The notes under the pieces were generated by a model. That model had not been told where the DNA came from. It worked only from the letters and a program-made list of their open reading frames with translations, and made no database searches. Positions 34,748 to 57,095 of a stretch of DNA of 64,000 bases are shown piece after piece. The stretch lies in the IMG/VR virus record IMGVR_UViG_3300049215_000771, positions 248,001-312,000 of that record; one strand, written 5' to 3'. The first letter of the stretch is position 1. The number at the start of each line of letters is the position of its first letter. The position numbers were made by a program, and so were the translations under genes.

Positions 34748-37700
34748 ATGGCAACAGTAGCGCCCGATCAAAACCCTCAAGTATTAGACACGGTTCTGTT
34801 CAACCTGCCGACGCCGGATGCCAATGGCTGCTTCCTGGCTGATCCATACATGGTGAACAGCGTTGTGGTCTATTTCGTTGAGAGAGATTTCGCTGATCTG
34901 AATGAAAACCAATATGACAATATCATTCAGGATGACGCCGCCAGTGCTGCCGCTGACGCAGCCGAGGCCGTGGCCTGCGCCAATCCGACTGCCGCCAACA
35001 TTCAACAAGCAAAAACACTTCGGTCACAAGCCAACAGTTTGGCATTCACAAGCCCATTCTACTACAACGATGCCAACCCTGTCACTGTTGTAGGCAATGC
35101 TGATTATCCTGCCTGGCTTACCACAGATCAAAGCAACGCCTTCATCACGCACACTGGCACCGGGCAGTTTCAATATGCCTGGAACAGTTATGGAATGCGT
35201 GAAGGCGACTACTTTGTTTGTTGGACCTGGACGCCCAACCCTGCCGGCGACACCATCTCCAACAGTTTCAAGTTCAATCTGGCTGGCAATTCAGTAGTAA
35301 CAACCAGCATTCCGACGCACTACACACAGCCGGACAAGTATTACACTCTACTGACAACCTACCTGCCGGAAACGTACAAAACACTGATTACTGACACCGA
35401 CCGAACACCAGATGTATTGGACAGGTTCAACCAGGCCGTAGCCCTTGGTTTTACTGCTGTAGAAAACCTAGCCAATCAGATTGTAGACCTTCAGGACGCC
35501 AACAGTACGGCAGAAGCATTCTTGCCCCTTCTGGCCCGTTACTTTGGCATTACCCTGAAAACACAAGACCCAGCACTGTGGAGGCGTCAGATCAAGCAAG
35601 CCATCCCATTGTTCAAGAAGAAGGGAACGATTGGAGGCTTGCAGGAGGCATTGGCTCAGGCTGGAATCAGGATGGCGAAAGTAACCAGGTTGTGGCAGAT
35701 TATTTCTTCATACACTTGGCAGGACGCTTTCACCTATGACGGAACCAATGACACCTGGGAACTTTCCAAGACGCCAGTGATGCCTATTGATCCAACCAAC
35801 TATGCTGTTTACTTGAGGCCAGAAGGACAACCTTCTTACATGCAATTGGGAACAGATTATGTTTCCTTTGGAACTGACATGGACGGCAACCCAACAGTAA
35901 CCTGGGCTGGCAGCGGCCTGATGATCGACCCTATTGACCTTGTTGCTGGCGACATCGTAAAGGTGTTGTATGTTTACAAGTCAGTGCCGGATAGCCCACA
36001 CCAGACCATTGAGAATTATGTGCGCAGCCTGCCATTGGCTGACCAGCGTGACGAAACAAAACAACAATACCCACTAAAAAACTGGAACGTGCGACTCATC
36101 GAGGAGGACGACCCGTTGTTCAATGTGGTCATTCCCGACAAGTTTCCATTCATGGACCCGCTGATCTACGGCAAGGTGCGCACTGAATTCCCGTACTCCG
36201 AGAATGCCTACAACGCCGATGAATACAACGGCAGCATCAGGAATTCCTACAATCCCTGCGACATCGACAAGGACTTCCTCGATCCATGTACGGCCTGCCT
36301 GGGAAGCAAGTTCAATATCGACCTGGAGATCGAGAACTTGTCCAACAATCGCATTCTGGAGGCCCAGGACGTGATATTGGAATTCGTGCCGTTCCACGCC
36401 CAGCTTCAGACCATGAACTTCACTGGCGGGATAACTGAATTTATAACGCCTCCCCTGGAAGAAATTGAGGTTTTGGTGAGTGTTTCGGGCGGTGATTTTG
36501 TGCTTTGCGGCGAGGGACAGATGTGGTTCAACCGTGCCATGAAGGGCGGCTTAACCACCCATATCATCGACCGCTCCATGTTGGCATCGTCGGACATCCC
36601 AATATCAAATCAGGCCGGCACAGCCTACAACGATTACATTACCATCTGGAGTTCCAGTGTTTTGTTCGACAACATAGCCATGTCCACAGATGGTTCGGCT
36701 TTATTGGAAGTTTTTGCACCATCACCAAATGCCGGAACCTACAACCTGAGCAACCCGTCCCGCAACACAGCAGTTGTAACTGGTGCTACGGAACCACTGA
36801 ACACTTCAGCATTTACGTTCAGGCTATCGAACGTCTTGACTTCAGGTACGCTGTGTAACATCTATCAGAACAACTCGGTGACGTTGCTTGATGCGAACAA
36901 TCCGTTCCCTAGTGTTTTGTCCTTGTTTGACGTGACATATAACGGGGCGACGGGACCATATACAGTTTTGATTCCTGCTTACAGCGCCACACATTATCAG
37001 GTGAACAGTGTTTTCCCGGACGGCTCCTTGGAGTTGTTGGATCACGGAGAAACGCTGCCAACATCCAATGTAACCAACGTGGCTTATACCTTGTACGATG
37101 AGAACGGAGCGGTGGTAAGCAGCAGTACGACAGGCGGGTTGACGATAGCAGTACGGGGTCGGGTGCAATCGTTGGATAGTAGCATTCAGGACATCCACAA
37201 CATGATTCGTGGCACCTGTTATGTTGTTACGGGCGGCAGTCAGTATTTGATTGATGGTTTTGTCAGTCCCACTGATGACGCCGAATTCTACATCGACGGG
37301 TACGCAGGCGGGGACATGGCTGGCACGACTTTGACGATTTACCAGCGAATTGTAGACAACGAAATTGGATATTTCAGCCATCGAGGACTGGAGTTGCAGG
37401 TTTCAGGCAACCTGGAAACAACTTTGAACATACAAAATGGTGCAAATCCACCTGCTACGCCGCTAGAAAATAACGACTTCATGGAGAACTACATTGTAAC
37501 AATTAACAGCCAAGATTACTTGATTAGCATGATAAATGGCAACAGCCCACCGGGATACACGACAATTACTTTGGCCGGGCCGGACAATTACTGGAAGACG
37601 TTGGGTGCAGGAGGTACGAGCGTGAATTTCACGGTAACACACTTCACCAAGGAAACGATCACAGTTCCAGGCCAGCAGTTCGATCTACCTGCTCACACCT

Positions 37701-37879
37701 TCCCGACCTATGACCGTGGAGGCCGTGAGGTTATTGACCAGCAAACCAACAACGATCCGCCTGTAGGTGTGTCGATGGTTGGCAAGGGTGCCGGTTTGAC
37801 AGAAGTTGTCGAGCAATCGGAGGGCATTAGTTTTGAAATCGAATGGGCCGATGGCTCGAAGGATCAGGGGAATATATGA
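34748..37879 (+). CDS. Baseplate wedge protein with Tail_P2_I-like domain (gp7-like)
   Basis: FLPLLARYFG..WRRQIKQAIPLFKKKGTIGGL..AL; follows the J gene. Confidence 0.75.
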   Translation: MATVAPDQNPQVLDTVLFNLPTPDANGCFLADPYMVNSVVVYFVERDFADLNENQYDNIIQDDAASAAADAAEAVACANPTAANIQQAKTLRSQANSLAFTSPFYYNDANPVTVVGNADYPAWLTTDQSNAFITHTGTGQFQYAWNSYGMREGDYFVCWTWTPNPAGDTISNSFKFNLAGNSVVTTSIPTHYTQPDKYYTLLTTYLPETYKTLITDTDRTPDVLDRFNQAVALGFTAVENLANQIVDLQDANSTAEAFLPLLARYFGITLKTQDPALWRRQIKQAIPLFKKKGTIGGLQEALAQAGIRMAKVTRLWQIISSYTWQDAFTYDGTNDTWELSKTPVMPIDPTNYAVYLRPEGQPSYMQLGTDYVSFGTDMDGNPTVTWAGSGLMIDPIDLVAGDIVKVLYVYKSVPDSPHQTIENYVRSLPLADQRDETKQQYPLKNWNVRLIEEDDPLFNVVIPDKFPFMDPLIYGKVRTEFPYSENAYNADEYNGSIRNSYNPCDIDKDFLDPCTACLGSKFNIDLEIENLSNNRILEAQDVILEFVPFHAQLQTMNFTGGITEFITPPLEEIEVLVSVSGGDFVLCGEGQMWFNRAMKGGLTTHIIDRSMLASSDIPISNQAGTAYNDYITIWSSSVLFDNIAMSTDGSALLEVFAPSPNAGTYNLSNPSRNTAVVTGATEPLNTSAFTFRLSNVLTSGTLCNIYQNNSVTLLDANNPFPSVLSLFDVTYNGATGPYTVLIPAYSATHYQVNSVFPDGSLELLDHGETLPTSNVTNVAYTLYDENGAVVSSSTTGGLTIAVRGRVQSLDSSIQDIHNMIRGTCYVVTGGSQYLIDGFVSPTDDAEFYIDGYAGGDMAGTTLTIYQRIVDNEIGYFSHRGLELQVSGNLETTLNIQNGANPPATPLENNDFMENYIVTINSQDYLISMINGNSPPGYTTITLAGPDNYWKTLGAGGTSVNFTVTHFTKETITVPGQQFDLPAHTFPTYDRGGREVIDQQTNNDPPVGVSMVGKGAGLTEVVEQSEGISFEIEWADGSKDQGNI

Positions 37880-38355
37880 GAGAAACACATAGCCCGTGTG
37901 AAGTGTACGGCCATGTCCAGGCGATCATCGACTACAAGTCTGGCGAGAGGGCCGTCATTGAGTTTCCGAACACCATTCTTCGCACGGGAAGGAATGCGTT
38001 GGCGGCTTCACTTGCCAATGATGTAGGAGGCCAGTTCAACTTCTATATCTCAAGGATGTTGTTCGGCGACGGCGGCACGGCGGGCGGCGTCGTTAAGTTC
38101 GTAGACACTGCCAGAAACGGGTTGTTTGGTATTACCCGTGCCAACAAGCCAGTTATTGCGCAGGTCGATCCGAACATTCCATCTCAGGTGATTTTCACTT
38201 CTGTCGTCGCCTACAGTGAGGCGAACGGTTACACTTTGAATGAGATGGCGTTGCAGATGAACACAGGGGATTTCTACAGTATGGTGACGTTCCCGGACCT
38301 AACCAAGACAGATCAGATGCAGATTACTTGGAATTGGAGGCTTTCCTTCGTATGA
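37876..38355 (+). CDS. Tail/baseplate fibre-attachment protein
   Basis: NTILRTGR..ISRMLFGDGG..EANG..LNEMAL..KT..ITWNWRL, typical of tail-collar/wedge proteins; ATGA coupling. Confidence 0.6.
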   Translation: MRETHSPCEVYGHVQAIIDYKSGERAVIEFPNTILRTGRNALAASLANDVGGQFNFYISRMLFGDGGTAGGVVKFVDTARNGLFGITRANKPVIAQVDPNIPSQVIFTSVVAYSEANGYTLNEMALQMNTGDFYSMVTFPDLTKTDQMQITWNWRLSFV

Positions 38356-42314: not shown

Positions 42315-43367
42315 ATGGCTGTACAAAGGATTTCTTCCCTGGACCTGGGGTACTCGTCAGGTCAATTGTCGCTTTTTCCTTCAGCCTTGGACTCGGCATA
42401 TCAACTGTACAAAGCAGCCAACAACGCCGTAACCAAACTGAAGCAAACGATGACGTACAACGCAAAATACATCGTCGTTGAAGATACAACAGGCTTCCCG
42501 CCGAACGGCCTCATCAGAATCGGCCCACCACCCGGCCAACCGGGAAATTCCGAACTGATCTATTACGATCAGGTCACAACGGGTGTATTCCGTAATCTGA
42601 TCCGTGGTTTCGCCGGCTCCATCCAAGGCCAGTGGACTGTAGGAAGCTACGTCACCAACTCGGTGATGGCAGAACACCACAACTCCGTCAAGGATGCAGT
42701 CCTTCAGATGGAGGCCGATCTCGGTACGGAGGTTGATCCAACAGCCACGAGCCTGAATGGAATCCTGAAGTCGCAAGAAACTCGGTTCTTGTCACCCCAG
42801 GCTATCTTCAGGGCGTGGCCCCAAGCTGGTCCGCCTCCATTGCGTGTTCGTTTCCAAAACTTCAGCACCGGGCCAGTTATTCGATCCCTTTGGGATTTTG
42901 GTGATGGAACAACTTCTGTCGAGAAGTCGCCCATTCATACCTACTTAGCCGATGGTGTGTATACCGTCAGCTTAAACATCATTACTTTGCTTGGAGCGCA
43001 AGGGATCGTAACGAAAACAAACTACATAACCGTAGACCCAGGAGACAGACAACCTTTCTTCTATGTTACGCCTCAAACTGGTCTATCCGCTGCTACTGCG
43101 GCCAAGTTGAACGTACAACCAACAACATTCCAGTTTGTCGATCAAACAGATGGCGACATCTCCCAGCGCTACTGGATTTTCGACGGCAACGGAAAAATCA
43201 ATGGCGTAGAAGTAGCGAACCAAAGCCTCCCTGAAAACGATCCAAACATACACACGGCAACCTACGTTTATGACCTGCCTGGCAGCTACACCCCTTCGTT
43301 GTTGGTTTTGTTTGCCAACCAGGAGCTAAAAAGAGCCTACTTGTCAAGTACAATCACGGTGCAGTAA
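42315..43367 (+). CDS. PKD-domain tail fibre/baseplate protein
   Basis: SLWDFGDG..PIHTY..GVYTVSL PKD; HHN motif shared with the next two genes. Confidence 0.75.
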   Translation: MAVQRISSLDLGYSSGQLSLFPSALDSAYQLYKAANNAVTKLKQTMTYNAKYIVVEDTTGFPPNGLIRIGPPPGQPGNSELIYYDQVTTGVFRNLIRGFAGSIQGQWTVGSYVTNSVMAEHHNSVKDAVLQMEADLGTEVDPTATSLNGILKSQETRFLSPQAIFRAWPQAGPPPLRVRFQNFSTGPVIRSLWDFGDGTTSVEKSPIHTYLADGVYTVSLNIITLLGAQGIVTKTNYITVDPGDRQPFFYVTPQTGLSAATAAKLNVQPTTFQFVDQTDGDISQRYWIFDGNGKINGVEVANQSLPENDPNIHTATYVYDLPGSYTPSLLVLFANQELKRAYLSSTITVQ

Positions 43368-45628
43368 TGACAATCCCAAATGGAAGCAACTATCCAGCGG
43401 CATTGGACACAGACGACAATATGTTCCTTGTCCATGACTCGCTTCGTGTAACCCTTGCGCAAGATTACAACCCTGGCGACACATCCATTACTGTTTCCGG
43501 TGACTTGGAAACTATGTCCAGATTTCCGCCCACCGGCCTCATTACCCTTACCGAACAATGCAGCGACCCCAAACTACGGGCTATTTCTTTCTACTACAAA
43601 GCAACCGACAATCTTTCTACGTTTAGCGGCCTGGAATTGCTGGAAGGTTTCACGGATAATCCAAAACCTGCCCTTATCACAGACGTAACCCAAAACGTCA
43701 TGGATAAACATCACAACAGCATCAAAGATGCTGTAATAGCCATCCAGCAGTTCGCCGGCAAGAAAGGTGAAGTTGGCACTATTCCACTTGAAGGAACAAT
43801 GGAAGCCAGGATCAATTATCTGCGCAACCTCGTGCTGATTCCCAAGGCGTGGATGTCCGCCAACACAACAATCGGGCTGGTTCCATTCACTGTTGAGTTT
43901 ACCGACCAATCTTTCCGACTAGGAACGGATGGAACCTCCCATTCCATCACCCGAACCTGGGACTTCGGTGATAACAACGGACCATCGGAAATTACCATCT
44001 CGCAGACGGCCACTGGCCTCCCCTGCCCGTCACCAGACATTACGCCACCTGAAACGATCTCTCACACCTACACAACGCCCGGAATCTACGATGTGACGCT
44101 GACGATAACCAACGACTTCGGCTCAGATACAGTCGTATTTCCCAGCCTCATTAACGCCCGTGTGCCTGCTCCTGATTTTGCTGTGATAAATTTCACGCCA
44201 AGGTCGGGACAGATTTTCACGCCAGGCAGCCCAATTGGTGGGCCGTATATAACAACGCCAATCATTCGATCCCCTACCAACACCATCATCACACTCGACG
44301 TGCCACAGGGCATCAACGGAAACACAGGCGAGTCTTATGCTGGAGAAACATTGGATGGGGCTGGACATCCTATCGACCCGATTACAGCCTACACCTGGTC
44401 GCTGGCTGATGATTTGCAGCACAACAACTCCATGATGGCTAATGCCTCCTACAGCGTGGGCGGATTGTACGATCTAATCCTGCGTGTAGACACGGAATTC
44501 GGCGCATATCGCATCACAAAGTACCCGGCAGCCCTGGACATCGTTGAACGAGACAACTTATGGTTCTGGAGTTTCAGCAACATTCAGCAAGTGTACAGTT
44601 TTGAGTTTGGATTGTTCTCTGAGACGTTCAAAAACCGCTCTCAGGCAGCCCTGAACGTCAATTATAACGATTCCTTCCTGTCAGGAGCCGTCAACAGTGC
44701 CCAGCAGCTTCGGGAATTCCATCGCAACAATGGCTTCGCTCAACGTGGGTCTATCCAGTCTGGATTGGGCGGAACGGGTCTTTTGTATTGGGCGAGCGGC
44801 AGAAACGCCACAGATAGCCCCGCTTTGGAAACTATTCAGTTCAGCGAGTTCAACGGTTTCGCTGATACCTACACTGCTCGCTCCCCCATCAACCGCCCGT
44901 GGAATTGGGTGTCACTGGTATCGCAAAGCAAGATTTACTTTCTGCTAGGCGGGGTAACAACCCCTTCTTTGCCAAATACCTCGCCGACAAATCAGCGGCA
45001 AGACGCCCTCCTGCTATCGAACCTCAGCGTAGCTTCTGTCTCCTTTGGTAATTCAAACTACAAAAACGGAGCCAACGAGTTGATGCAGAACGAGGTAACT
45101 TACGACATCAGCGGCAATCCACTCCAGGGAAACATGAGCGTGTACAGGTCATGTTGGAAAGATAGCGCCGGCTATTTCCTTCGGAATGAAGGTACTGGTG
45201 CGTTCTTCAGGATGGCCGCTTTCTACAAAACAAACGGGAACACAACCGAGCCGTTCCAGTTTCTCTACAAACTGCCAGATATGGCAGGACCGGCAAAAGT
45301 GGAAGGTCAACTGGTAACACTGAGCCAAGGGGTGTTCTTCTTCAATAACTCCGGGTCGGTGTCGGCATACAACCCTACATCGGCAGTATGGGAAGTCGGT
45401 GGCCCTGGTGCAAACTCGGCGGCGTTTCGCTCCTTCCAGGATACGAATGTGCTTGATTTCGACGATCCAGCGAACACACTGCTGGCAACGTCTGACAACC
45501 AACAAGTAGCATATTTGAGCTACGACTACAGCACCAATGCTTTCATCAAATTCAATGCTGCGGACTTGACATTCAGCAGCGTGGTTGCGAGGCCAAGCGG
45601 GACGCAATGGCAGATGACAATCTTCTGA
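43367..45628 (+). CDS. PKD-domain tail fibre / putative receptor-binding protein
   Basis: HHN anchor, TWDFGD..SHTYTTPGIYDVTL PKD, C-terminal beta-propeller-like region. Confidence 0.75.
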   Translation: MTIPNGSNYPAALDTDDNMFLVHDSLRVTLAQDYNPGDTSITVSGDLETMSRFPPTGLITLTEQCSDPKLRAISFYYKATDNLSTFSGLELLEGFTDNPKPALITDVTQNVMDKHHNSIKDAVIAIQQFAGKKGEVGTIPLEGTMEARINYLRNLVLIPKAWMSANTTIGLVPFTVEFTDQSFRLGTDGTSHSITRTWDFGDNNGPSEITISQTATGLPCPSPDITPPETISHTYTTPGIYDVTLTITNDFGSDTVVFPSLINARVPAPDFAVINFTPRSGQIFTPGSPIGGPYITTPIIRSPTNTIITLDVPQGINGNTGESYAGETLDGAGHPIDPITAYTWSLADDLQHNNSMMANASYSVGGLYDLILRVDTEFGAYRITKYPAALDIVERDNLWFWSFSNIQQVYSFEFGLFSETFKNRSQAALNVNYNDSFLSGAVNSAQQLREFHRNNGFAQRGSIQSGLGGTGLLYWASGRNATDSPALETIQFSEFNGFADTYTARSPINRPWNWVSLVSQSKIYFLLGGVTTPSLPNTSPTNQRQDALLLSNLSVASVSFGNSNYKNGANELMQNEVTYDISGNPLQGNMSVYRSCWKDSAGYFLRNEGTGAFFRMAAFYKTNGNTTEPFQFLYKLPDMAGPAKVEGQLVTLSQGVFFFNNSGSVSAYNPTSAVWEVGGPGANSAAFRSFQDTNVLDFDDPANTLLATSDNQQVAYLSYDYSTNAFIKFNAADLTFSSVVARPSGTQWQMTIF

Positions 45629-45648: not shown

Positions 45649-48600
45649 ATGGCTAATGGCTTTCCTCCAGTTCCGGTTTACCCTGCGGGGTACGATAGTG
45701 ACAAAACTCTGTATTTGGTTTACAACACAGCAGAAACAGTCACCACCCGTGATAATGCGCCCTGGTCTGAATTCATTCACATCAAACCAGTTGATTCCGA
45801 TGCAGATGAAATTTGGGCCAGCAATGGCTTCGCCAATATCGAAGGCGAACTGTTCTACTACGACGCCGTAGGTTACGACGAATTTGGCAAAGTAAACGTC
45901 CTGAAGCGATGCGCCAGGAACCTGGGCGGCTCGCACACTGTATGGAACCCGCAAGGCTCCGACGTTCGTGGTTTCGTCATTGCCGAACACCACAACCAAC
46001 TCGTGGAGGCCATTCTAAACACCCAGGGCTTCATTGGCTACAACTTCACGAATGACTGCTCCACACTTGACTGGAGGATTCGCCATCTCCAGGCTTTGCC
46101 GATCATCGACGATGATTCCAACTGCCCCACAATCGTTCTTGATGTACAAGTCATTAGCCAAGACCCAGCCCAGGGCACCGTCATCCAGTATGCCATTCTC
46201 ATCAATGGCCCATACACTGGATTCCGCCTGGATTTCGGTGACGGAGATTTTACAACCACAGCTACCAACGGATACCACCAATACGCCGCCAATGCGACCA
46301 TCGACCCAATCGTAACCATCGTCAACTCCAACTGCTCGGTAGTAACTTCGCCAATTCAGCGTACTATCGCCACTGAACCTGCGGTCGGGTCTGCTTTGAC
46401 GCCATTTGAAGTTACAATCCCAACGATACCTTCACTACCCCCAATTATTTTCCCGAACGTAATTCCACCATCGAACGCTTTCAACCTGCCGCCAATTGTG
46501 TTCCCGTGCTTGAACATTGGACCTATTGGCCCAATCAACATACCTTCTATCATCACTGTTGAACCACCGATCAACATACCTTCGGAGATTTTCATCACGC
46601 CGGTCACAATCCCGACCGAGATCACGATCACCCCAATCACGATCCCGACCGAGGTTGTCATCACCCCGATCACGATCCCAACACACATAACGATCTCGCC
46701 GGTTACGATCCCGACGCTGATTACTATCACGCCGGTTACGATCAGCCCAATTGACATTCCGACGTTAATCGTCATCACGCCGGTCAGCATCCCGACCGAA
46801 ATCGTCATCACGCCGGTCAGCATCCCGACCGAAATCGTCATCACGCCGGTCAGCATCCCGACATTGATTACGATTACGCCGGTCAACATCCCGAACGTCA
46901 TTACGATCACTCCGATCACAATCCCGAACATCAGGATCACACCGATCTCGATCCCGAACATCACGATCTCGCCGGTCAGCATCCCGACCGTTATCACGAT
47001 CACGCCGGTAACGATCCCGACTCAGATCACGTTCGGGCCAGTGACGATTCCGACTGCGATCACAATTACACCAGTGACGATTCCGACTGCAATCACAATT
47101 ACACCAGTCACAATCCCGACGACAATTACCATCACGCCGGTCAATATCCCGACGAACATTACCATTACGCCGGTCAATATCCCGACACAGATCACGTTCG
47201 GGCCAGTAACGATCCCGACACAGATCACGTTCGGGCCAGTAACGATCCCGACACAGATCACGTTCGGGCCAGTGACGATCCCGACTCAGATCACGATCAC
47301 TCCGATCACGATCCCGAACATCAGGATCACGCCGATCTCGATCCCGAACATCACGATCTCGCCGGTCAGCATCCCGACAACAATCACCATTACGCCGGTC
47401 AACATCCCGACAGTGATAACGATCACGCCGTTCCCGTGCAAAATTCCATCGCAGATCACGATCACTCCGGTCACGATCCCGACGAACATCACTATTACAC
47501 CAATTTCGATACCGAACATCAACATTTCACCGATTTCGATACCGACAAAGATCACAATTACACCAGTCACGATCCCGACGACAATTACCATCACGCCGGT
47601 CAATATCCCGACGAACATCACCATCACGCCGGTTGATATTCCGACGAACATCACCATCACGCCGGTCGCAATCCCGACGAACATCACGATTACGCCGGTC
47701 AACATCCCGACGTTGATTACCATTACGCCGGTCAACATCCCGACAACAATCACCATTACACCAGTGACGATCCCGACTCAGATCACGTTCGGGCCAGTGA
47801 CGATCCCGACTCAGATCACGATCACTCCGATCACGATCCCGAACATCAGGATCACGCCGATCTCGATCCCGAACATCACGATCTCGCCGGTCAGCATCCC
47901 GACAACAATCACCATTACGCCGGTCAACATCCCGACAGTGATAACGATCTCGCCGGTCAACATCCCGACAAACATAACGATCTCGCCGGTTACAATACCG
48001 ACTAACATCACCATTACACCTGTCACGATACCGACGAAGATCACCATTACGCCGGTTGACATCCCGACGAACATCACGATTACGCCGGTCAACATCCCGA
48101 CGTTGATTACCATTACGCCGGTCAACATCCCGACTCAGATCACGTTCGGGCCAGTGACAATCCCGACTCAGATCACGTTCGGACCAGTGACGATCCCGAC
48201 TCAGATCACGATCACTCCGATCACGATCCCGAACATCAGGATCACTCCGATCACGATCCCGAACATCACGATTACGCCGGTCAACATCCCGACGTTGATT
48301 ACCATCACGCCTGCCAACATCCCGACGAACATCACCATCACGCCGGTCAACATCCCGACAAACATCACCATTACGCCGGTTACAATACCGACTAACATCA
48401 CCATTACGCCGGTTACAATACCGACGAAGATCACCATCACTCCGGTCACGATCCCGACAGTGATAACGATCACTCCGGTCACGATCCCGACAGTGATAAC
48501 GATCACTCCGGTCACGATCCCGACAGTGATAACGATCACACCAGTTGACATCCCGACTGCAATCACGATCACTCCGGTTACAATCCCGACGAACATCACC

Positions 48601-51600
48601 ATTACGCCGGTAACGATTCCGACAACGATTACGATTACTCCAGTCACGATTCCGACAAAAATCACCATTACGCCGGTCAACATCCCGACGAACATCACCA
48701 TTACGCCGGTTACAATACCGACGAACATCACTATTACGCCGGTCAACATCCCGACGTTGATTACCATTACGCCGGTCACGATCCCGACGACAATTACCAT
48801 CACGCCGGTCACGATCCCGACAACAATCACCATTACGCCGGTCAACATCCCGACGTTGATTACCATTACGCCGGTCAACATCCCGACGTTGATTACCATT
48901 ACGCCGGTCACGATCCCGACTCAGATCACGTTCGGGCCAGTAACGATCCCGACTCAGATCACGTTCGGGCCAGTGACGATTCCGACTAAGATCACGATTA
49001 CACCGATCACGATTCCGGCAATCAGGATCACGCCGATCTCGATCCCGAATATCACGATTTCACCTGTAAACATCCCGACGACAATTACCATCACGCCGGT
49101 CAACATCCCGACAGCGATCACGATCACGCCAGTTGATATTCCGACAGCGATCACGATCACGCCAGTTGATATTCCGACAGCGATCACGATCACGCCAGTC
49201 AACATCCCAACGAACATCACCATTACGCCGGTCACGATACCGACAGCGATTACCATTACGCCGGTCACGATACCGACAAAGATTACCATTACGCCGGTCA
49301 ACATCCCGACGTTGATTGCGATCACGCCGGTCAACATCCCGACAAACATCACCATCACACCAGTTACGATCCCGACACGAATCACAATCACGCCGGTCAC
49401 GATCCCAACAGCGATCACGATCACGCCGGTCACGATCCCGACGACAATTACCATCACGCCGGTCAACATCCCAACAGCAATCACGATCACGCCGGTCAAC
49501 ATCCCGACTCAGATCACGTTCGGGCCAGTGACGATCCCGACTCAGATCACGTTCGGGCCGGTTACAATTCCGACCAAGATCACGATCACTCCGGTAACGA
49601 TCCCAAACATCAGGATCACACCGATCTCGATCCCGAACATCACGATTACTCCAGTTGATATTCCGACAGCGATCACGATCACGCCGGTCAACATCCCGAC
49701 AGCGATCACCATCACTCCAGTTGATATTCCAACAGCGATCACCATCACGCCGGTCAACATCCCGACAGCGATCACCATCACGCCGGTCAACATCCCGACA
49801 GCGATCACCATCACGCCGGTCACGATCCCGACGTTGATTACCATTACCCCTGTGATAATCCCGACGTTAATTACAATTACGCCGGTCACGATACCGACAA
49901 AAATCACCATCACGCCGGTCGCAATCCCGACGAACATCACCATTACACCGATCACGATCCCGACAGCGATCACTATTACGCCGGTTGATATTCCGACAGC
50001 GATCACTATTACGCCGGTCAACATCCCGACAGCGATCACTATTACGCCGGTCAACATCCCGACAGCGATCACGATCACGCCGGTCACGATCCCAACAGCG
50101 ATCACGATCACGCCGGTCAACATCCCGACAACAATCACCATTACGCCGGTCAACATCCCGACGTTGATTACCATTACACCAATTACAATCCCAACACAAA
50201 TTACGTTCGGACCAGTGACGATCCCGACTCAAATTACGTTCGGGCCAGTGACGATTCCGACTAAGATCACGATCACACCGATCACGATTCCGGCAATCAG
50301 GATCACGCCGATCTCGATCCCAAACATCATGATCTCGCCGATCTCGATACCGACAGTGATTACGATCTCGCCGGTCAATATCCCGACAGCGATCACGATC
50401 ACTCCAGTTGATATTCCGACAGCGATCACGATCACGCCAGTTGATATTCCGACAGCGATCACGATCACGCCGGTCACGATCCCAACAGCGATTACCATTA
50501 CGCCGGTCACGATCCCGACAGCGATTACCATTACGCCGGTCACGATACCGACAGCAATCACCATTACGCCGGTCAACATCCCGACGAGTATCACGATCAC
50601 GCCGATCACGATTCCTGCAATCACGATCACGCCGATCTCAATCCCGAATATCAACATTACGCCGATCTCGATCCCAGCGATCACGATCACACCGATCTCG
50701 ATCCCAGCGATCACGATCACACCGATCTCGATCCCAGCGATCACGATCACACCGATCTCGATTCCGAATGTGAACATCACGCCGATCACGATCCCAAATG
50801 TGAACATCACACCGATCTCGATCCCGGACATTAACATCACGCCGATCACGATCCCAAATGTGAACATCACACCGATCTCGATCCCGGACATTAACATCAC
50901 GCCGATCACGATTCCTGCAATCACGATCACGCCGATCTCGATTCCAGCAATCACGATCACACCGATCTCGATTCCGAATGTGAACATCACGCCGATCTCG
51001 ATACCGGACATCAATATCACGCCGATCACGATTCCTGCAATCACGATCACGCCGATCACGATCCCGGACATCAACATCACGCCGGTCACAATCCCGGACA
51101 TCAACGTGAATTGGGGACCAGCGCCAACAGTTACCTGCACGGTAACGGTGTCGTGTCCTTCTTCGCCGTCAACGACGCCATCTATGGGGTTCCTGGCGGG
51201 TGGGGTAGCTTTGCCGAGCGACTTCCAGGATGGCTTCTCACCGATTGAGGGAACGGTAGAGACAAGTGACATTGGCATTCCAACTGAAATTCAGTTGGTT
51301 GTGCCTGAAATCCCGGACATCCGAGTGATTCACGACATCCCGGCCATGATTGAGGTTGTGGCCCCGAAGATTCCGCCGATTGAGATCACGGGCTGGCAGA
51401 ACATCCCGAAGACCATCGAGGTCATTGCCACGGACATCCCGAAGACCATCGAGGTTGTGGGAGCGCACGCTATTCCGAAGTCGATCTCGATTGAGGGGGC
51501 GTCGAACATCCCAACCGTCATCAGGCTAGAAGTGCCTGTGGACTTCCCGAAGACGATTGTGCTGGACGCCAGCGGCATCCCGGACAAGATTCAAGTTGTC

Positions 51601-51795
51601 GGCATTCCGCCAGTCATTGAATTGATTGGCAACATCCCAACGGAAATCAAACTAACGATGCCTGAGAAACCGGAAGTAGAAATGGTATACAGGGGCGCTC
51701 CTATAGAGATGAAGATCAGCCTGGACACGAGCCGGCTGACAGGCGAGGATCAAAACGCCAACTGTGTAGCGATTGTCCCGTGCAAACCGAGCTAA
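45649..51795 (+). CDS. 2048-aa tail fibre-like protein with Ile/Pro/Thr repeat shaft
   Basis: HHN anchor plus PKD-like LDFGDG, about 1500 aa of 10-11-aa repeats, then a non-repetitive C-domain. Confidence 0.75.
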   Translation: MANGFPPVPVYPAGYDSDKTLYLVYNTAETVTTRDNAPWSEFIHIKPVDSDADEIWASNGFANIEGELFYYDAVGYDEFGKVNVLKRCARNLGGSHTVWNPQGSDVRGFVIAEHHNQLVEAILNTQGFIGYNFTNDCSTLDWRIRHLQALPIIDDDSNCPTIVLDVQVISQDPAQGTVIQYAILINGPYTGFRLDFGDGDFTTTATNGYHQYAANATIDPIVTIVNSNCSVVTSPIQRTIATEPAVGSALTPFEVTIPTIPSLPPIIFPNVIPPSNAFNLPPIVFPCLNIGPIGPINIPSIITVEPPINIPSEIFITPVTIPTEITITPITIPTEVVITPITIPTHITISPVTIPTLITITPVTISPIDIPTLIVITPVSIPTEIVITPVSIPTEIVITPVSIPTLITITPVNIPNVITITPITIPNIRITPISIPNITISPVSIPTVITITPVTIPTQITFGPVTIPTAITITPVTIPTAITITPVTIPTTITITPVNIPTNITITPVNIPTQITFGPVTIPTQITFGPVTIPTQITFGPVTIPTQITITPITIPNIRITPISIPNITISPVSIPTTITITPVNIPTVITITPFPCKIPSQITITPVTIPTNITITPISIPNINISPISIPTKITITPVTIPTTITITPVNIPTNITITPVDIPTNITITPVAIPTNITITPVNIPTLITITPVNIPTTITITPVTIPTQITFGPVTIPTQITITPITIPNIRITPISIPNITISPVSIPTTITITPVNIPTVITISPVNIPTNITISPVTIPTNITITPVTIPTKITITPVDIPTNITITPVNIPTLITITPVNIPTQITFGPVTIPTQITFGPVTIPTQITITPITIPNIRITPITIPNITITPVNIPTLITITPANIPTNITITPVNIPTNITITPVTIPTNITITPVTIPTKITITPVTIPTVITITPVTIPTVITITPVTIPTVITITPVDIPTAITITPVTIPTNITITPVTIPTTITITPVTIPTKITITPVNIPTNITITPVTIPTNITITPVNIPTLITITPVTIPTTITITPVTIPTTITITPVNIPTLITITPVNIPTLITITPVTIPTQITFGPVTIPTQITFGPVTIPTKITITPITIPAIRITPISIPNITISPVNIPTTITITPVNIPTAITITPVDIPTAITITPVDIPTAITITPVNIPTNITITPVTIPTAITITPVTIPTKITITPVNIPTLIAITPVNIPTNITITPVTIPTRITITPVTIPTAITITPVTIPTTITITPVNIPTAITITPVNIPTQITFGPVTIPTQITFGPVTIPTKITITPVTIPNIRITPISIPNITITPVDIPTAITITPVNIPTAITITPVDIPTAITITPVNIPTAITITPVNIPTAITITPVTIPTLITITPVIIPTLITITPVTIPTKITITPVAIPTNITITPITIPTAITITPVDIPTAITITPVNIPTAITITPVNIPTAITITPVTIPTAITITPVNIPTTITITPVNIPTLITITPITIPTQITFGPVTIPTQITFGPVTIPTKITITPITIPAIRITPISIPNIMISPISIPTVITISPVNIPTAITITPVDIPTAITITPVDIPTAITITPVTIPTAITITPVTIPTAITITPVTIPTAITITPVNIPTSITITPITIPAITITPISIPNINITPISIPAITITPISIPAITITPISIPAITITPISIPNVNITPITIPNVNITPISIPDINITPITIPNVNITPISIPDINITPITIPAITITPISIPAITITPISIPNVNITPISIPDINITPITIPAITITPITIPDINITPVTIPDINVNWGPAPTVTCTVTVSCPSSPSTTPSMGFLAGGVALPSDFQDGFSPIEGTVETSDIGIPTEIQLVVPEIPDIRVIHDIPAMIEVVAPKIPPIEITGWQNIPKTIEVIATDIPKTIEVVGAHAIPKSISIEGASNIPTVIRLEVPVDFPKTIVLDASGIPDKIQVVGIPPVIELIGNIPTEIKLTMPEKPEVEMVYRGAPIEMKISLDTSRLTGEDQNANCVAIVPCKPS
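46570..51110 (+). repeat. Tandem 33/30-bp repeat array
   Basis: Units IPTxITITPV(T/N/D), IPTQITFGPVT and IPxIxITPI(S/T); roughly 140 units from span divided by unit length. Confidence 0.95.
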
Positions 51796-51796
51796 G

Positions 51797-52663
51797 ATGA
51801 GAATCAAAAAAACCAAAGACAAAAACGAGTACCTGCTGACCAAGCAGGGTATGTGGGTTCGCAACTTCACCAAGAACCTGGTTCCGTTTGTTGATTTGAA
51901 CGAATCAGTAGACAAGAAAGATCATTTCATGCTACTGAAGAATGAAATAAACAACAATCGAGCCAGGTACACTTGGATTGACTCGGAGAAATTTTATCAC
52001 ACCAAGATGGTAATTGTTTCTGACGGATATGGATTCCAGGAGAAGCACAAACTGCTAGAGGATTTGCCCAAGGACGTGGCAATCATTGCCGTCCACGGGG
52101 CGCTCGCAAAATGGAACATCAACAGAAATCCAACCTACTACGTTGTCAACAACCCATATGAATTGTGCATGATGTACTTGCCACGCCGTCTGAGAAGTTT
52201 GCCAAAATGTATAGCTTCAACCAGAACAAATTACGAGTTCCTTGCTAACTACCGTGGCACCAGGTATCGGTACTTTCCTGTGAGTGGAAAGAATTATGCA
52301 GGGTCAAAAACCAGCGAAGCCCAATGGCAAATTGATGATTATCGCAATCCGATTTGTGCCGCCATAGGGCTTGCCTACCGCTTTGGGGTGGACAGGTTAG
52401 CGCTGCTGTGTTGCGATGATGTATTCAAAGATGAAAGGGTAGGATCGGAACAAATACACAACGGCATGTGGATTTACCCGCCTCAGTTGACGGCCCACGG
52501 GCTAATTGACGGTTGTTTGTACTGGCTAAGAAACACGCCATATCGAGATATGAAAGTTGTAGATCACAGTTCTGGCCCACTTTACGAGAATGCTGTGTAT
52601 ATAGAGAAGGACAATCTAGTGTCTTTCCTACAGGATGGAGTGTCTGATGACAAAAAGGAATGA
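51797..52663 (+). CDS. Maf/DUF115 (MptE-like) fold protein
   Basis: MVIVSDGYG..IIAVHGAL..PTYYVVNNP and NPICAAIGLAYRFGVDRLALLCCD; starts 1 nt after the fibre stop. Confidence 0.55.
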   Translation: MRIKKTKDKNEYLLTKQGMWVRNFTKNLVPFVDLNESVDKKDHFMLLKNEINNNRARYTWIDSEKFYHTKMVIVSDGYGFQEKHKLLEDLPKDVAIIAVHGALAKWNINRNPTYYVVNNPYELCMMYLPRRLRSLPKCIASTRTNYEFLANYRGTRYRYFPVSGKNYAGSKTSEAQWQIDDYRNPICAAIGLAYRFGVDRLALLCCDDVFKDERVGSEQIHNGMWIYPPQLTAHGLIDGCLYWLRNTPYRDMKVVDHSSGPLYENAVYIEKDNLVSFLQDGVSDDKKE

Positions 52664-54856: not shown

Positions 54857-55840
54857 ATGCCAAAACTAATCAAACCCAAGGCTTACGCCGCAGTCCCGCT
54901 GGGCCTTTCTGACTTTTACAAAAAGCGCAACAAAGTGCTGATCTGGCATGAGAAAGGAGGGCTGGGCGATGTTTTCATGCAACGAATGATGTTCGACGAC
55001 TTGAAAGAAATAGCTCCGAACTGCGACCTAATTTTCGCTTGCCTGCCGGAATACTTTGATGCGGCCAGGGACCATCCAGCCATTTCTGAAGTAATCGACT
55101 CACGCTCAGTGAATCCGAAAGATTACGTCGCCTGCTACAACACATGCGTTACCATCGCCGACCGCTGTGAGAATTTCTACGCCCCAAACTGCAACGAACA
55201 TAGGGCTGACATATGGGCCAAGGTGCTGGGAGTTGAGTTAAAAACCCACGAGATGAACTTCCGACTCAATCCGAGGTTGGTTGCGACAGGTAAAACAAAA
55301 ATGGAGACGTTCAGGAGGTCGGGGCAACCATTGGTGGCTTTGGCCCCTGTAAGCAAAATGTCAACCAAGTCGTTGCTGCCAGAACAATTGGAAGCAATTG
55401 TAGAAGCTACGAGGGATTGCAGTCTGGTTGGGATACATAACCAGGAGGTCAGAGAACTTACGGCGTTGGGAGTGCCGGGTTTGTACAAATCGACCATTCA
55501 GGAATGGATGAGTTACATCAATGCTGCTGATTACGTCATCTCAGTTGATACAGCGGCTTTCCACTTGGCAGGCGGGTTGAAAAAACCATTGATGGGAATT
55601 TTTACTTTCGCTGACGGGAAAGTGTACGGCAAGTATTTTGACTTCATCCTGGTGCAGAAACACCGGGACAACGGAGATTGGGACTGCGGCCCCTGTTTCA
55701 AGTTCATCGACTGTCCTAAATGCAAATCTCTACCGAAACCTTGTTTGACTGAAATTACAGGCGAGATGCTGAGGGGTGGTGTGGAGAAAATGTTCCAGCG
55801 ATGGCCTCGTTACAGAACAGCCTTGCCAATACTCGTTTAG
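54857..55840 (+). CDS. Glycosyltransferase family 9 (heptosyltransferase-like)
   Basis: GGLGDV, HPAISEVI, ADYVISVDTAAFHLAGGLKKPLMGIF; Cys-rich C-terminal loop. Confidence 0.85.
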   Translation: MPKLIKPKAYAAVPLGLSDFYKKRNKVLIWHEKGGLGDVFMQRMMFDDLKEIAPNCDLIFACLPEYFDAARDHPAISEVIDSRSVNPKDYVACYNTCVTIADRCENFYAPNCNEHRADIWAKVLGVELKTHEMNFRLNPRLVATGKTKMETFRRSGQPLVALAPVSKMSTKSLLPEQLEAIVEATRDCSLVGIHNQEVRELTALGVPGLYKSTIQEWMSYINAADYVISVDTAAFHLAGGLKKPLMGIFTFADGKVYGKYFDFILVQKHRDNGDWDCGPCFKFIDCPKCKSLPKPCLTEITGEMLRGGVEKMFQRWPRYRTALPILV

Positions 55841-56090: not shown

Positions 56091-57095
56091 ATGCCAATCG
56101 GATTTGACTGTGGAACGTACAACTTAGTCGCTTGCACCAGGGATGACAAAGGAAACTTCGTCCACAAGCGAGAAGTAAATGCTTTCCTCGAACTCCCGCT
56201 GGAGAATCGCTTTGTATTCAACATGATGAAGAATGCGGGCGTGCCCTTGATTGAAAGGGAGAAAGTCGGCTATGCCTTGGGCGAGGCGGCTGTCAACATG
56301 GCCTACACAATGAGCCAGTTGGAACTTAAAAGGCCCATGACGGCGGGATGCGTCAACCCGAAAGAAAGAGACGCTTTTCAGATTTTGTCCATCATGATTC
56401 ACAGCTTGCTGGACGATGTTAGGAAGGATGGAGAAGTGTTGTACTACTCCGTCCCAGCCAATGCCATCAATGAGGAGACAGATGCAGACTACCACGCCAA
56501 AATCCTTGAAGCCATCTTCAAAGCCTACAAATCCGACAAAGGGTACAAAGTTGACCCACGCCCGATCAATGAAGGTTTGGCCTTGGTGTATGCGGAACTC
56601 GGCAAGAAAGCATTCACTGGTATCGGCGTTTCCTTCGGCGCTGGTATGGTAAACCTATGCTATGCAATGTACGGCAATCCAGTTTTCCAGTTCTCGATTG
56701 TGAATTCTGGCGACTGGATCGACAAGCAAGCAGCGAAGGCAACCGGCGAATCGGTTTCCTTCATCAACAAGCAGAAGACAAAGATCGACCTGACCAAACA
56801 ACCGACAACCCTTGTGGATCGGGCTATATGCACACAATATAACCTGATGATTGAGAAAACAGTTCAGGAGATCAAGAAGGGACTCACCAATGCTTCAAAG
56901 GTCGTTCACTCGGACGCCCCTGTAGACATTGTTATCGCTGGTGGTACATCGTCGCCATATGGTTTTGCGTCGGTGTTCAAGGATACCATCAAAGTAGCCA
57001 ATCTGCCTATTCAGGTTGGCGAAGTCGTTAAGCCAACGGACCCGCTATACAGCGTGGCTCGTGGCTGTTTGATTGCTGCGGAAGCAGCGAAGTAA
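56091..57095 (+). CDS. Actin-like ATPase (ParM/MreB/MamK superfamily)
   Basis: Phosphate 1 IGFDCGTYN, connect INEG, phosphate 2 GVSFGAGMVN, adenosine IAGGTS, connect 2 PLYSVARG. Confidence 0.85.
   Translation: MPIGFDCGTYNLVACTRDDKGNFVHKREVNAFLELPLENRFVFNMMKNAGVPLIEREKVGYALGEAAVNMAYTMSQLELKRPMTAGCVNPKERDAFQILSIMIHSLLDDVRKDGEVLYYSVPANAINEETDADYHAKILEAIFKAYKSDKGYKVDPRPINEGLALVYAELGKKAFTGIGVSFGAGMVNLCYAMYGNPVFQFSIVNSGDWIDKQAAKATGESVSFINKQKTKIDLTKQPTTLVDRAICTQYNLMIEKTVQEIKKGLTNASKVVHSDAPVDIVIAGGTSSPYGFASVFKDTIKVANLPIQVGEVVKPTDPLYSVARGCLIAAEAAK

What the first reader, a model, noticed from the sequence alone, without database searches (positions are those of the whole stretch)
45649..51795. Fibre shaft of about 140 nearly charge-free Ile/Pro/Thr units with a higher-order pattern
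Seen: about 1500 aa built mainly from I, P, T, V and N. Arg-containing IPxIRITP units occur seven times (about 46920, 47310, 47835, 48225, 49010, 49600, 50285), usually after QITFGPVT units, marking super-repeats of about 390-790 bp. The unit switches from 11 aa to 10 aa near 50600, and silent codon variation is dense. Inference: a beta-strand/proline-turn trimeric shaft unlike collagen or T4 gp34/37 repeats, with periodic kinks and a length tunable by recombination, perhaps to reach through a thick capsule or S-layer.
Basis: partly seen in the sequence, partly recalled or inferred. Interest (0 to 1): 0.6.

Follow-up and report, generated by a model that had tools for sequence, protein, structure and literature searches.

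The report
Giant repeat shaft in megaphage fibre
A 2,048-residue tail-fibre-like protein of a 533-kb uncultured phage carries about 141 tandem 10/11-residue Ile-Thr-Pro units, by far the longest known version of a variable-length shaft found in an unannotated family of phage fibre proteins whose fold is still unknown.

Summary
ORF 45649-51795 (+) encodes 2,048 aa. Residues 295-1822 are about 141 tandem units, 106 of 11 aa (PVxIPTxITIT) and 31 of 10 aa. They are 88% I/T/P/V/N and 2.7% charged. Seven Arg-marked blocks lie at the stated sites, and the unit switches to 10 aa at nt 50602. The scaffold positions are invariant in protein despite heavy synonymous divergence, and two positions per unit vary freely.

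The gene lies in the baseplate/fibre module of a 533-kb virus record from moss metagenomes. It belongs to an unannotated family of at least 215 clusters at 50% identity. Members have an N-terminal anchor domain, a PKD-like domain, a variable IP[ST]xIx[IF] repeat shaft and a conserved Cys-bracketed C-terminal domain. Other members are 514-964 aa with a 26-630 aa shaft; this one has 1,558 aa. Near-identical relatives differ by whole-unit indels, which supports a tunable length.

The fold and oligomeric state are unresolved. AlphaFold folds the N-terminal domains confidently but not the shaft, and the trimer job gave no answer. Public short-read contigs confirm the local sequence, but none spans the array, so the copy number is unverified.

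Verdict: a new variant of a known kind (phage fibre shaft), of moderate interest.

The parts
45649..51795 (+). Fibre gene, 2,048 aa (P0001), single copy in the 533-kb virus record
   Evidence: The start matches those of the homologues (MANGFPP...).
45649..46128 (+). N-terminal anchor-like domain (about aa 1-160; YPxxxDSDxTL...ELFYYD...AEHHNQ motif). It is paralogous to the N-termini of the two upstream genes.
   Evidence: BLASTP E 2e-08 and 3e-05 to the upstream genes. In homologue P0014 AlphaFold gives pLDDT about 90. VIA Z 10.1 to 8jov_1, 9.0 to 8rk3_o and 8.8 to 8vjh_A.
46129..46383 (+). PKD-like Ig domain (about aa 161-245, DFGDG...H.Y). It is not detected by Pfam in this protein.
   Evidence: Inferred by homology to P0014, where the fold has pLDDT 93-97 and Z 9.0 to PKD1 of PrtV 4l9d. 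Pfam found no hit in this protein.
46384..46566 (+). Pro-rich linker and first degenerate units (PPIVFPCLNIGPIGPINIPS...), conserved across the family
   Evidence: consensus PPIVFPC...IPS
46567..50601 (+). Main array: mostly 11-aa units PVxIPTxITIT, interrupted by the seven marker blocks
46912..46971 (+). Marker block 1 (PITIPNIRIT + PISIPNITIS, two 10-aa units), without QITFG units before it
47203..47361 (+). Marker block 2 (QITFG units, QITIT, IRIT unit, NITIS unit). It is part of a 171-nt exact duplicate of block 3.
47761..47886 (+). Marker block 3
48118..48276 (+). Marker block 4
48904..49062 (+). Marker block 5
49492..49650 (+). Marker block 6
50179..50337 (+). Marker block 7
50602..51114 (+). 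Terminal zone of seventeen units: sixteen 10-aa units (PI[ST]IP[AND][IV][TN]IT), each two I-x-I-x-P pentads, plus a final 11-aa unit
51100..51792 (+). Conserved C-terminal domain (aa 1818-2048). It has looser, charged IPxxIx[LV] units bracketed by two C-x5-C motifs (C1830, C1836, C2039, C2045). It is the presumed distal or receptor-binding end.
   Evidence: Alignment A1. An HMM search gave 215 hits at E<=1e-3. Cys positions.
42315..43367 (+). Context: 350-aa paralogue (same N-terminal module plus a PKD domain)
   Evidence: The same gene order is seen in L006.
43367..45628 (+). Context: 753-aa paralogue (same N-terminal module plus a PKD domain)
   Evidence: The same gene order is seen in L006/L009.

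Best explanation
This is a baseplate-attached fibre protein of a myovirus-like megaphage (533-kb record, moss metagenomes). It belongs to an unannotated family with four parts: (i) an N-terminal anchor domain shared with two neighbouring paralogues, (ii) a PKD-like Ig domain, (iii) a shaft of 10/11-residue units with the core pattern IP[ST]xIx[IF], and (iv) a conserved C-terminal domain bracketed by Cys.

In this phage the shaft has grown to about 141 units through tandem duplication of single units and of 12-24-unit blocks. Each unit supplies two short beta strands (V-x-I and I-T-I) bracketed by invariant prolines. The aliphatic side chains are buried and the Thr side chains and two hypervariable positions are exposed. 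The result is a rigid, almost uncharged rod.

I infer that the rod is most likely a homotrimer in which units stack at about 4.8 A each, giving about 65-70 nm. Its job would be to act as a spacer that sets how far the C-terminal tip reaches from the baseplate. Whole-unit gains and losses by unequal recombination or slippage would change that reach without disturbing either end. The seven marker blocks (Phe-Gly units followed by two shortened units, one with Arg) are register breaks that mark the old block duplications and may act as hinges.

Shown: the anatomy, the selection pattern, family membership, synteny, and unit indels in relatives. Inferred: virion location, beta-rod geometry, trimer, hinge role and spacer function.
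For: Context:
- Upstream genes are a gpV OB-fold spike (PF04717, 4e-08), a baseplate wedge (phrog_219, 1e-24), Tail_P2_I (5e-09) and a tail-collar fibre N domain.
- The N-terminal module is shared with two upstream PKD proteins.
- The same gene order occurs in LR756511.1, L005, L006 and L009.

Family:
- The C-terminal HMM finds 215 representatives (107 at E<=1e-30), and 96 have both end domains.
- All those examined have IP[ST]xIx[IF] shafts in many flavours.
- The Atlas look-alikes are viral clusters.

Selection:
- Positions 1, 4, 5, 6 and 8 have pN<=0.02 with pS 0.16-0.69.
- Positions 3 and 7 have pN 0.46 and 0.66.
- This means an old, selected protein repeat.

Tunability:
- Shafts span 26-630 aa in other members and 1,558 aa here.
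- Near-identical proteins differ by 10-aa or 33-aa whole-unit indels.
- Internal block duplicates exist: a 171-nt exact repeat, and 5-unit blocks up to 93% identical against a 75% background.

Structure:
- The N-terminal and PKD domains fold at pLDDT 90-97, while the shaft and C-terminal domain do not fold as a monomer even with 75 sequences. This is typical of intertwined oligomers.
- The N-terminal fold resembles phage tail and baseplate chains at Z 8.8-10.1.
- The shortest known solenoid coils (10-12 residues) hold only Cys or small residues inside (PMC13080227). That argues against one 10/11-residue unit closing on itself around four Ile/Val.
Against: - There is no direct evidence that the protein is in virions.
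- Single-sequence AlphaFold gave a monomeric two-sheet solenoid with one unit per coil, at pLDDT 60-72 in the repeats.
- No solved relative was found by sequence, and no significant fold match to the shaft model was found.
- The array's order and copy number are not spanned by any public contig examined.
- Residue identities at the variable positions show only lag-1 correlation, which does not discriminate between architectures.
- The host and receptor are unknown.
Confidence: 0.6

Rival explanations
1. The shaft is a monomeric beta-solenoid, not a trimer. One 10/11-residue unit forms one coil (about 68 nm), or two units form a pentapeptide-repeat-like square coil (about 34 nm), still serving as a fibre or spacer.
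For: - Single-sequence AlphaFold gave a regular EEEE--EE-- pattern per unit at pLDDT 60-72.
- The weak Foldseek rows are all beta-solenoids: RsaA, tapirin, GlmU, CsgA.
- The 10-aa unit is two I-x-I-x-P pentads, whose in/out pattern fits a quadrilateral helix.
- PKD domains are usually monomeric modules.
Against: - The confidence is low, and with a 75-sequence alignment the shaft is not folded at all.
- Known coils of 10-12 residues hold only disulfides or small residues inside (PMC13080227), whereas here four Ile/Val per unit must be buried.
- No 2-unit periodicity appears in the variable positions.
- Pfam pentapeptide models do not match.
Confidence: 0.3
2. The extreme length is an assembly artefact. 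The repeat type is real, but the assembler inflated or mis-ordered the array.
For: - In four public runs the k=31 contigs break at 46796 and 51028, and only 100-200-nt pieces lie inside. No record spans the array.
- Every relative with the same unit type (L004/L007, L006, L008, L009, L010) ends inside its array.
- No other member of 1,126-3,584 aa was found.
Against: - All 30 bins are covered, and 129 of 135 pieces are at least 99% alike in X1. The same holds in a second sample, X3.
- Unique internal pieces have depth 18-53 against a flank depth of 40.
- The longest exact internal repeat is 171 nt, the next is 80 nt, and only 342 of 4,801 positions lie in repeats of 99 nt or more. Large k-mers or read pairs can therefore order the array.
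- The reading frame stays open for 6.1 kb and joins both conserved end domains.
- The synonymous divergence pattern is biological.
Confidence: 0.1
3. It is not a reach-setting fibre. It could instead be a flexible, heavily O-glycosylated Thr/Pro tether, or a Thr-ladder surface that binds water, ice or polysaccharide, decorating the tail or the capsid.
For: - The array contains 414 Thr and has a T-x-T pattern (ITIT) in every unit.
- A GT9-like gene and an MptE/DUF115-like gene are conserved downstream in three phages.
- Long TxT solenoids organise water in ice-nucleation proteins (PMC9418140).
- The samples are moss metagenomes.
Against: - 29% Ile in strict alternation means buried strands, not a mucin-like coil.
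- Other family members have non-Thr units (DDIPDVITII, FDCISFCQPPS) with the same neighbouring genes, so Thr-richness is not a property of the family.
- The MptE-like hit is below Pfam's cut-off (23 against 34.6 bits).
- Nothing here was tested for glycans or ice.
Confidence: 0.1

Closest known systems
Unannotated 'PKD repeat protein' / hypothetical proteins of uncultured large phages (e.g. P0014, P0006, P0005; the orthologue in uncultured phage LR756511.1, L003:11986-14010)
   Same: - The same N-terminal domain, PKD-like domain and Pro-rich linker.
- A shaft of IP[ST]xIx[IF] units of 10-11 aa and the same C-terminal domain with four Cys.
- The same gene neighbourhood.
- P0014 even has PVDIPSEISIT units.
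   Different: Their shafts are 26-630 aa and their total lengths 514-964 aa. The window's shaft is 1,558 aa, almost charge-free, and organised in seven marked super-repeats.
Adenovirus fibre / reovirus sigma1 triple beta-spiral shaft
   Same: It is a tandem short repeat with alternating hydrophobic residues in two short strands and a conserved Pro/Gly turn. It is a rod whose length is set by the repeat number, and irregular repeats act as hinges (established knowledge, recalled from memory).
   Different: The period is 15 residues, not 10/11. There is no Pfam match and no structural evidence here. The viruses have eukaryotic hosts and there is no homology.
T4 gp5C / gp12-type triple-stranded beta-helix
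   Same: It is a phage tail component in which short units stack at about 4.8 A with hydrophobic residues pointing inward, and it is a trimer.
   Different: It has an 8-residue VxGxxxxx unit. Pfam/PHROG gave no match. An 11-residue face would make a wider prism than any known.
TxT beta-solenoids of insect antifreeze proteins and bacterial ice-nucleation proteins
   Same: They have very short tandem units (10-16 residues) and a T-x-T ladder on one face. Ice-nucleation proteins have long arrays of 65 coils (PMC13080227, PMC9418140).
   Different: Their cores are disulfides or small residues (10-12-residue coils) or they use 16-residue coils. This protein has no Cys in its units and has four aliphatic residues per unit, in a phage structural-gene context. 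No sequence match was found.
Pentapeptide repeat proteins (Rfr fold)
   Same: The 10-aa units are two pentads, I-x-I-x-P. Their i-2 / i inward pattern is that of a quadrilateral beta-helix.
   Different: The consensus A(D/N)LXX is absent. Ile at i-2 would overpack the core. Most units are 11 aa. There is no Pfam hit.

Membership tests
Huge-phage N-anchor/PKD/IPxxI-shaft/C-terminal-domain fibre family (unnamed; defined here) | Conserved C-terminal domain of about 230 aa with two C-x5-C motifs | tested here: met
   A1 alignment shows 72% and 43% identity to L004 and L005. The profile finds 215 representatives. Cys positions are 1830, 1836, 2039 and 2045.
Huge-phage N-anchor/PKD/IPxxI-shaft/C-terminal-domain fibre family (unnamed; defined here) | N-terminal YPxxxDSDxTL...AEHHNQ domain followed by a PKD-like DFGDG domain | tested here: met
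   phmmer with aa 1-260 hits 105 of the 154 collected proteins. There is 59% identity to L006 and 32.5% to LR756511.1.
Huge-phage N-anchor/PKD/IPxxI-shaft/C-terminal-domain fibre family (unnamed; defined here) | Central shaft of tandem 10-11-aa IP[ST]xIx[IF] units | tested here: met
Phage tail fibre (virion component attached to the baseplate) | Encoded in the tail/baseplate module | tested here: met
   The spike, wedge, Tail_P2_I and collar-fibre-like genes lie immediately upstream. The synteny is conserved in relatives.
Phage tail fibre (virion component attached to the baseplate) | Physically present in virions and homotrimeric | not testable with these tools
   There is no proteomics or structure. 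The one complex job returned no answer and is not evidence either way.
Triple beta-spiral (adenovirus-type shaft) | A 15-residue repeat with Pfam Adeno_shaft-like signature | tested here: not met
   The period is 10/11 residues. There is no Pfam hit at E<=0.01.
Triple-stranded beta-helix (gp5C-type) | An 8-residue VxGxxxxx repeat | tested here: not met
   The unit is 10/11 aa and Gly occurs only in the 13 FG units. There is no Pfam/PHROG hit.
Collagen-like phage fibre | G-X-Y triplets | tested here: not met
   Only 13 Gly occur in 1,528 aa.
Pentapeptide repeat family | The A(D/N)LXX consensus, detected by Pfam pentapeptide models | tested here: not met
   There is no Pfam hit. The pentads are I-x-I-x-P, and only in the 10-aa units.
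Short-coil TxT antifreeze solenoids (TmAFP / midge type) | A coil of 10-12 residues braced by internal disulfides | tested here: not met
   There is a single Cys in the whole array, at aa 597. The feature is taken from PMC13080227.
PKD domain (PF00801/PF18911) | Pfam model match above the gathering score | tested here: not met
   Pfam gives no hit for this protein, although both upstream paralogues match. The PKD-like fold is inferred from homologue P0014.

The most novel reading that the evidence does not exclude
The IP[ST]xIx[IF] unit defines a new class of fibrous beta architecture. It would be either the first solenoid with 10-11 residues per rung and a purely aliphatic core, or a new compact trimeric beta-spiral. 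Its length can be dialled in single-unit steps over more than a tenfold range (from a few units to 141), and in the ITIT subtype it carries a continuous Thr ladder about 70 nm long that could bind ordered water, ice or glycans.
Probability: 0.2. Interest if true: 0.75.

Novelty: new variant of a known kind. Interest (0 to 1): 0.5.

Why it matters
Huge phages are known almost only from metagenomes, and how they find their hosts is open. This locus identifies a widespread, unannotated fibre family (at least 215 clusters at 50% identity). The family has a modular design: fixed ends and a shaft whose length changes in whole units. The window holds its extreme case.

The shaft unit has no solved or confidently predicted structure. 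If it proves to be a new beta-rod architecture, it would be a naturally length-programmable, uncharged, rigid nanorod. The case also shows that short-read metagenome assemblies systematically lose such genes, because every relative with this unit type is cut inside its array.

Tried and rejected
- Pfam and PHROGs on the whole protein gave no family.
- A PDB sequence search with the C-terminal profile and with 317 aa of repeats gave nothing credible. The only rows were an SlrP LRR at E 0.002, which is probably compositional, and Mre11 at E 0.24.
- A Foldseek PDB search with the low-confidence solenoid model gave nothing at E<=1e-3.
- A Foldseek search with the whole P0014 model gave only PKD matches.
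- The homotrimer job (aa 1722-2048, three copies) returned 'no answer' (ipSAE 0.00, own fold uncertain, controls not run). It counts neither for nor against a trimer. A first attempt was over the size limit and was not run.
- The search for related loci with the N-terminal domain in viral contigs found no confirmed relative because the patterns were too strict.
- The search for homologous proteins restricted to candidates of 1,126-3,584 aa found none.
- A literature search for the unit strings found no paper.
- A search for a 2- or 3-unit periodicity in the variable positions found only lag-1 enrichment.
- PHROG/Pfam on the 4,553-aa upstream ORF gave no hits.
- The long minus-strand ORFs across the array (e.g. 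50229..51278) are rejected as by-products of the repeat's composition. Homology and the selection pattern support only the + frame.
- P0002 (from an annotated-record locus) was kept out of the alignments handed to fold and profile jobs, as the tools require.
Full report
**Observation**

The + strand ORF 45649..51795 encodes 2,048 aa. A scan for P..IP anchors finds 142 of them. Their spacing is 11 aa 106 times and 10 aa 31 times. The repeat region is aa 295-1822 (nt 46531-51114, 1,528 aa). It is 88% I/T/P/V/N and has 41 charged residues, or 2.7%.

Each is followed by a second 10-aa unit. Six of the seven are preceded by QITFG units plus a [QK]ITIT unit. The blocks are 390-786 nt apart (12-24 units). 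Pure 10-aa units start at nt 50602. Tandem Repeats Finder reports a 33-nt period with 117-131 copies.

**Is it a real, selected coding repeat?**

Units with identical amino acids average 91.3% DNA identity. Over 105 eleven-residue units pS is 0.55 and pN is 0.16. The split by position is sharp:
- P1, I4, P5, T6 and I8 are invariant in protein (pN<=0.02) while their codons differ (pS 0.16-0.69).
- Positions 3 (T/N/D/S) and 7 (A/Q/N/L/T/K) change about as fast as silent sites (pN 0.46 and 0.66).

That is the signature of an old array under purifying selection on a scaffold, with two exposed and free positions. The marker blocks are 79-92% identical to each other in DNA (blocks 2-7), against a 75% background for 5-unit blocks. 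One 171-nt exact duplicate joins blocks 2 and 3. The array therefore grew partly by duplication of multi-unit blocks.

**Assembly**

The window is part of a 532,729-bp virus record that IMG/VR classes as a provirus and CheckV rates 100% complete. Four moss-metagenome runs hold 67-87% of the sampled words.

Laid on 45900-51800, their k=31 contigs stop at 46796 and resume at 51028. Inside the array there are only 100-200-nt pieces. All 30 bins are covered, 129 of 135 pieces in X1 are at least 99% alike, and unique pieces have depth 18-53 against a flank depth of 40. No record spans the array and no joints were reported. The local sequence is therefore confirmed in at least two samples, but the order and copy number are not.

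The longest exact internal repeat is 171 nt and the next is 80 nt. Only 342 of 4,801 positions lie in exact repeats of 99 nt or more. An assembler using large k-mers or read pairs could therefore order the array. I put the artefact reading at about 0.1.

**Context**

Upstream on the same strand are:
- a gpV-type OB-fold spike (30530-32728);
- a gpJ-like baseplate wedge (33167-34741, phrog_219, 1e-24);
- a Tail_P2_I protein (34748-37876);
- a tail-collar-fibre-like protein (37843-38352).

Two PKD-domain proteins follow (42315-43364 and 43367-45625). Their first ~150 residues are paralogous to the N-terminus of this protein (E 2e-08 and 3e-05). Three consecutive genes thus share one anchor-like module, as expected for alternative fibres docking on one baseplate site.

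**Relatives**

Among 50,697 GenBank phage records, only the 595-kb uncultured phage LR756511.1 matches, to both the N- and C-terminal domains. Its orthologue is 674 aa and carries a short shaft of FDCISFCQPPS 11-aa units.

IMG/VR contig L005 encodes a 907-aa orthologue. L004 encodes the last ITITPVxIPTx units and a C-terminal domain about 70% identical, and the contig ends inside the array.

A profile of the C-terminal domain, searched against 1.84 billion representatives, finds 215 proteins at E<=1e-3 and 107 at E<=1e-30. The other 95 are 514-964 aa long and their central region is 26-630 aa, against 1,558 aa here. All those inspected have shafts of IP[ST]xIx[IF] units of 10-11 aa in many flavours: DDIPDVITII, PVDIPSEISIT, GPAPTLGPISF and Cys-rich forms.

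No candidate of 1,126-3,584 aa was found by the word search, and the own genome has a single copy. The sources call these proteins 'PKD repeat protein' or 'hypothetical protein'. The Atlas look-alike clusters are viral.

A degenerate DNA pattern for two ITIT units finds only five further stretches (one of them, L007, is the L004 contig), and every one of them ends inside its array. L009 has at least 31 units, and the identical N-terminal domain, read from L006, is 59% identical to the window's. Long arrays of this type are therefore probably under-represented in assemblies.

**Length variation**

Within 90% clusters:
- P0006 and P0157 are 99.9% identical and differ by one 10-aa unit.
- P0006 and P0155 are 97.8% identical and differ by another 10-aa unit.
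- P0016 and P0162 are identical over the aligned part and differ by a 33-aa block of three units.

This is direct evidence that shaft length changes in whole units between close relatives.

**Structure**

With a 75-sequence alignment, AlphaFold folds the N-terminal domain (pLDDT about 90) and a PKD-like domain (93-97) of family member P0014. It leaves the shaft and the C-terminal domain at 35-60.

The N-terminal domain resembles chains in phage tail assemblies: GP4 portal-tail 8jov_1 (Z 10.1, 104 residues), JBD30 baseplate 8rk3_o (Z 9.0) and Chi tail tip 8vjh_A (Z 8.8). The second domain resembles PKD1 of PrtV (Z 9.0).

Single-sequence AlphaFold of aa 1608-2048 gave a regular two-strand-per-unit solenoid at pLDDT 60-72 in the repeats. 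That model has no significant PDB match, only weak beta-solenoid rows. No solved relative exists by sequence. The fold is therefore open.

Two arguments favour an intertwined oligomer, but both are inference:
- The shortest solenoid coils described (10 residues in midge, modelled; 12 in Tenebrio) hold only disulfides or small residues inside (PMC13080227). Here four Ile/Val per unit must be buried.
- Failure of a monomer prediction despite a usable alignment is common for trimeric fibres.

Expected rod lengths:
- about 67 nm at 4.8 A per unit;
- about 34 nm if two units make one coil;
- about 130 nm for a beta-spiral-like rise.

**Mechanism proposed**

The N-terminus docks on the baseplate. 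The shaft is a rigid, uncharged spacer. The conserved C-terminal domain, bracketed by two C-x5-C motifs (C1830/1836 and C2039/2045), is the distal end. Unit number sets the reach and changes by unequal recombination. The marker blocks are register breaks, with F-G in place of I-T and two units shortened by one residue. They record ancient block duplications and may be hinges.

**Comparison and novelty**

The protein works like other repeat-number-tuned viral shafts, such as the adenovirus triple beta-spiral and gp5C-type triple beta-helices. It meets none of their defining sequence features: the period is 10/11 rather than 15 or 8, and no model matches. It is not collagen-like, not a pentapeptide-repeat protein, and not a disulfide-braced antifreeze solenoid.

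It is a member, and the most extreme one, of an unnamed family defined here. I rate it a new variant of a known kind, with interest 0.5. The most novel reading that remains open is a new beta-rod architecture, possibly with a functional Thr ladder. I give that a probability of 0.2.

Noticed in passing
window 56091-57092 (+); also L003:17534-18550: A full-length match to the Volactin family (PF25216, E 1e-72, model positions 1-321 of 321). Volactin is an actin-like protein, and here it is encoded by a 533-kb phage. It is conserved in LR756511.1 (E 3e-67) at the same position downstream of the fibre gene.
   Followed up: partly
window 14499-28160 (+): A 4,553-aa ORF lies just upstream of the baseplate genes. 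Its first ~3,000 aa are rich in Ala, Lys and Leu. Its last ~1,000 aa are Pro-rich repeats (PQ-rich units, and 14 copies of a 15-aa RPPxTVxPPV unit at nt 27003-27630). There are no Pfam or PHROG hits. By position and size it may be the tape measure protein, which would imply a very long tail. This is an inference only.
   Followed up: partly
window 51773-52660 and 54857-55837 (+); L003:14014-14841, 16287-17288; L005:14286-15248: An MptE/DUF115-like protein (23 bits, below Pfam's cut-off of 34.6, but seen in two phages) and a GT9-like glycosyltransferase (26.6 bits, cut-off 22) are conserved downstream of the fibre gene in three phages. They may glycosylate the fibre. This was not tested.
   Followed up: partly
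window 51136-51156 and 51763-51783 (aa 1830, 1836, 2039, 2045): Two C-x5-C motifs bracket the C-terminal domain. They are invariant in alignment A1 and nearly invariant across 75 family members. They could form a disulfide lock or a metal site.
   Followed up: no
window 46531-51114: Codon use inside the array differs strongly from that of the neighbouring structural genes. Pro CCG is 227 of 285 codons against 84 of 308, Thr ACG is 226 of 414 against 88 of 383, and Ile ATC is 317 of 445 against 151 of 290. This produces a GC skew of about -0.32 over 46-50 kb.
   Followed up: no
window 46356-51278 (- strand): A chain of long minus-strand ORFs (e.g. 48201..48911 of 236 aa and 50229..51278 of 349 aa) runs across the array. 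They are by-products of the repeat's composition and could be miscalled as genes.
   Followed up: yes
L004/L007, L006, L008, L009, L010: Every other contig carrying ITITPVxIPTx units, in IMG/VR and in the metagenome collection, ends inside its array. Short-read assemblies systematically truncate this gene, so long-shaft members are under-counted.
   Followed up: yes
P0024, P0126 and P0002 (relatives): Some family members have Cys-rich shaft units: CC doublets before IPS in P0024, and FDCISFCQPPS units with two Cys per 11 aa in P0002 and P0126. This hints at disulfide- or metal-braced versions of the same shaft.
   Followed up: no
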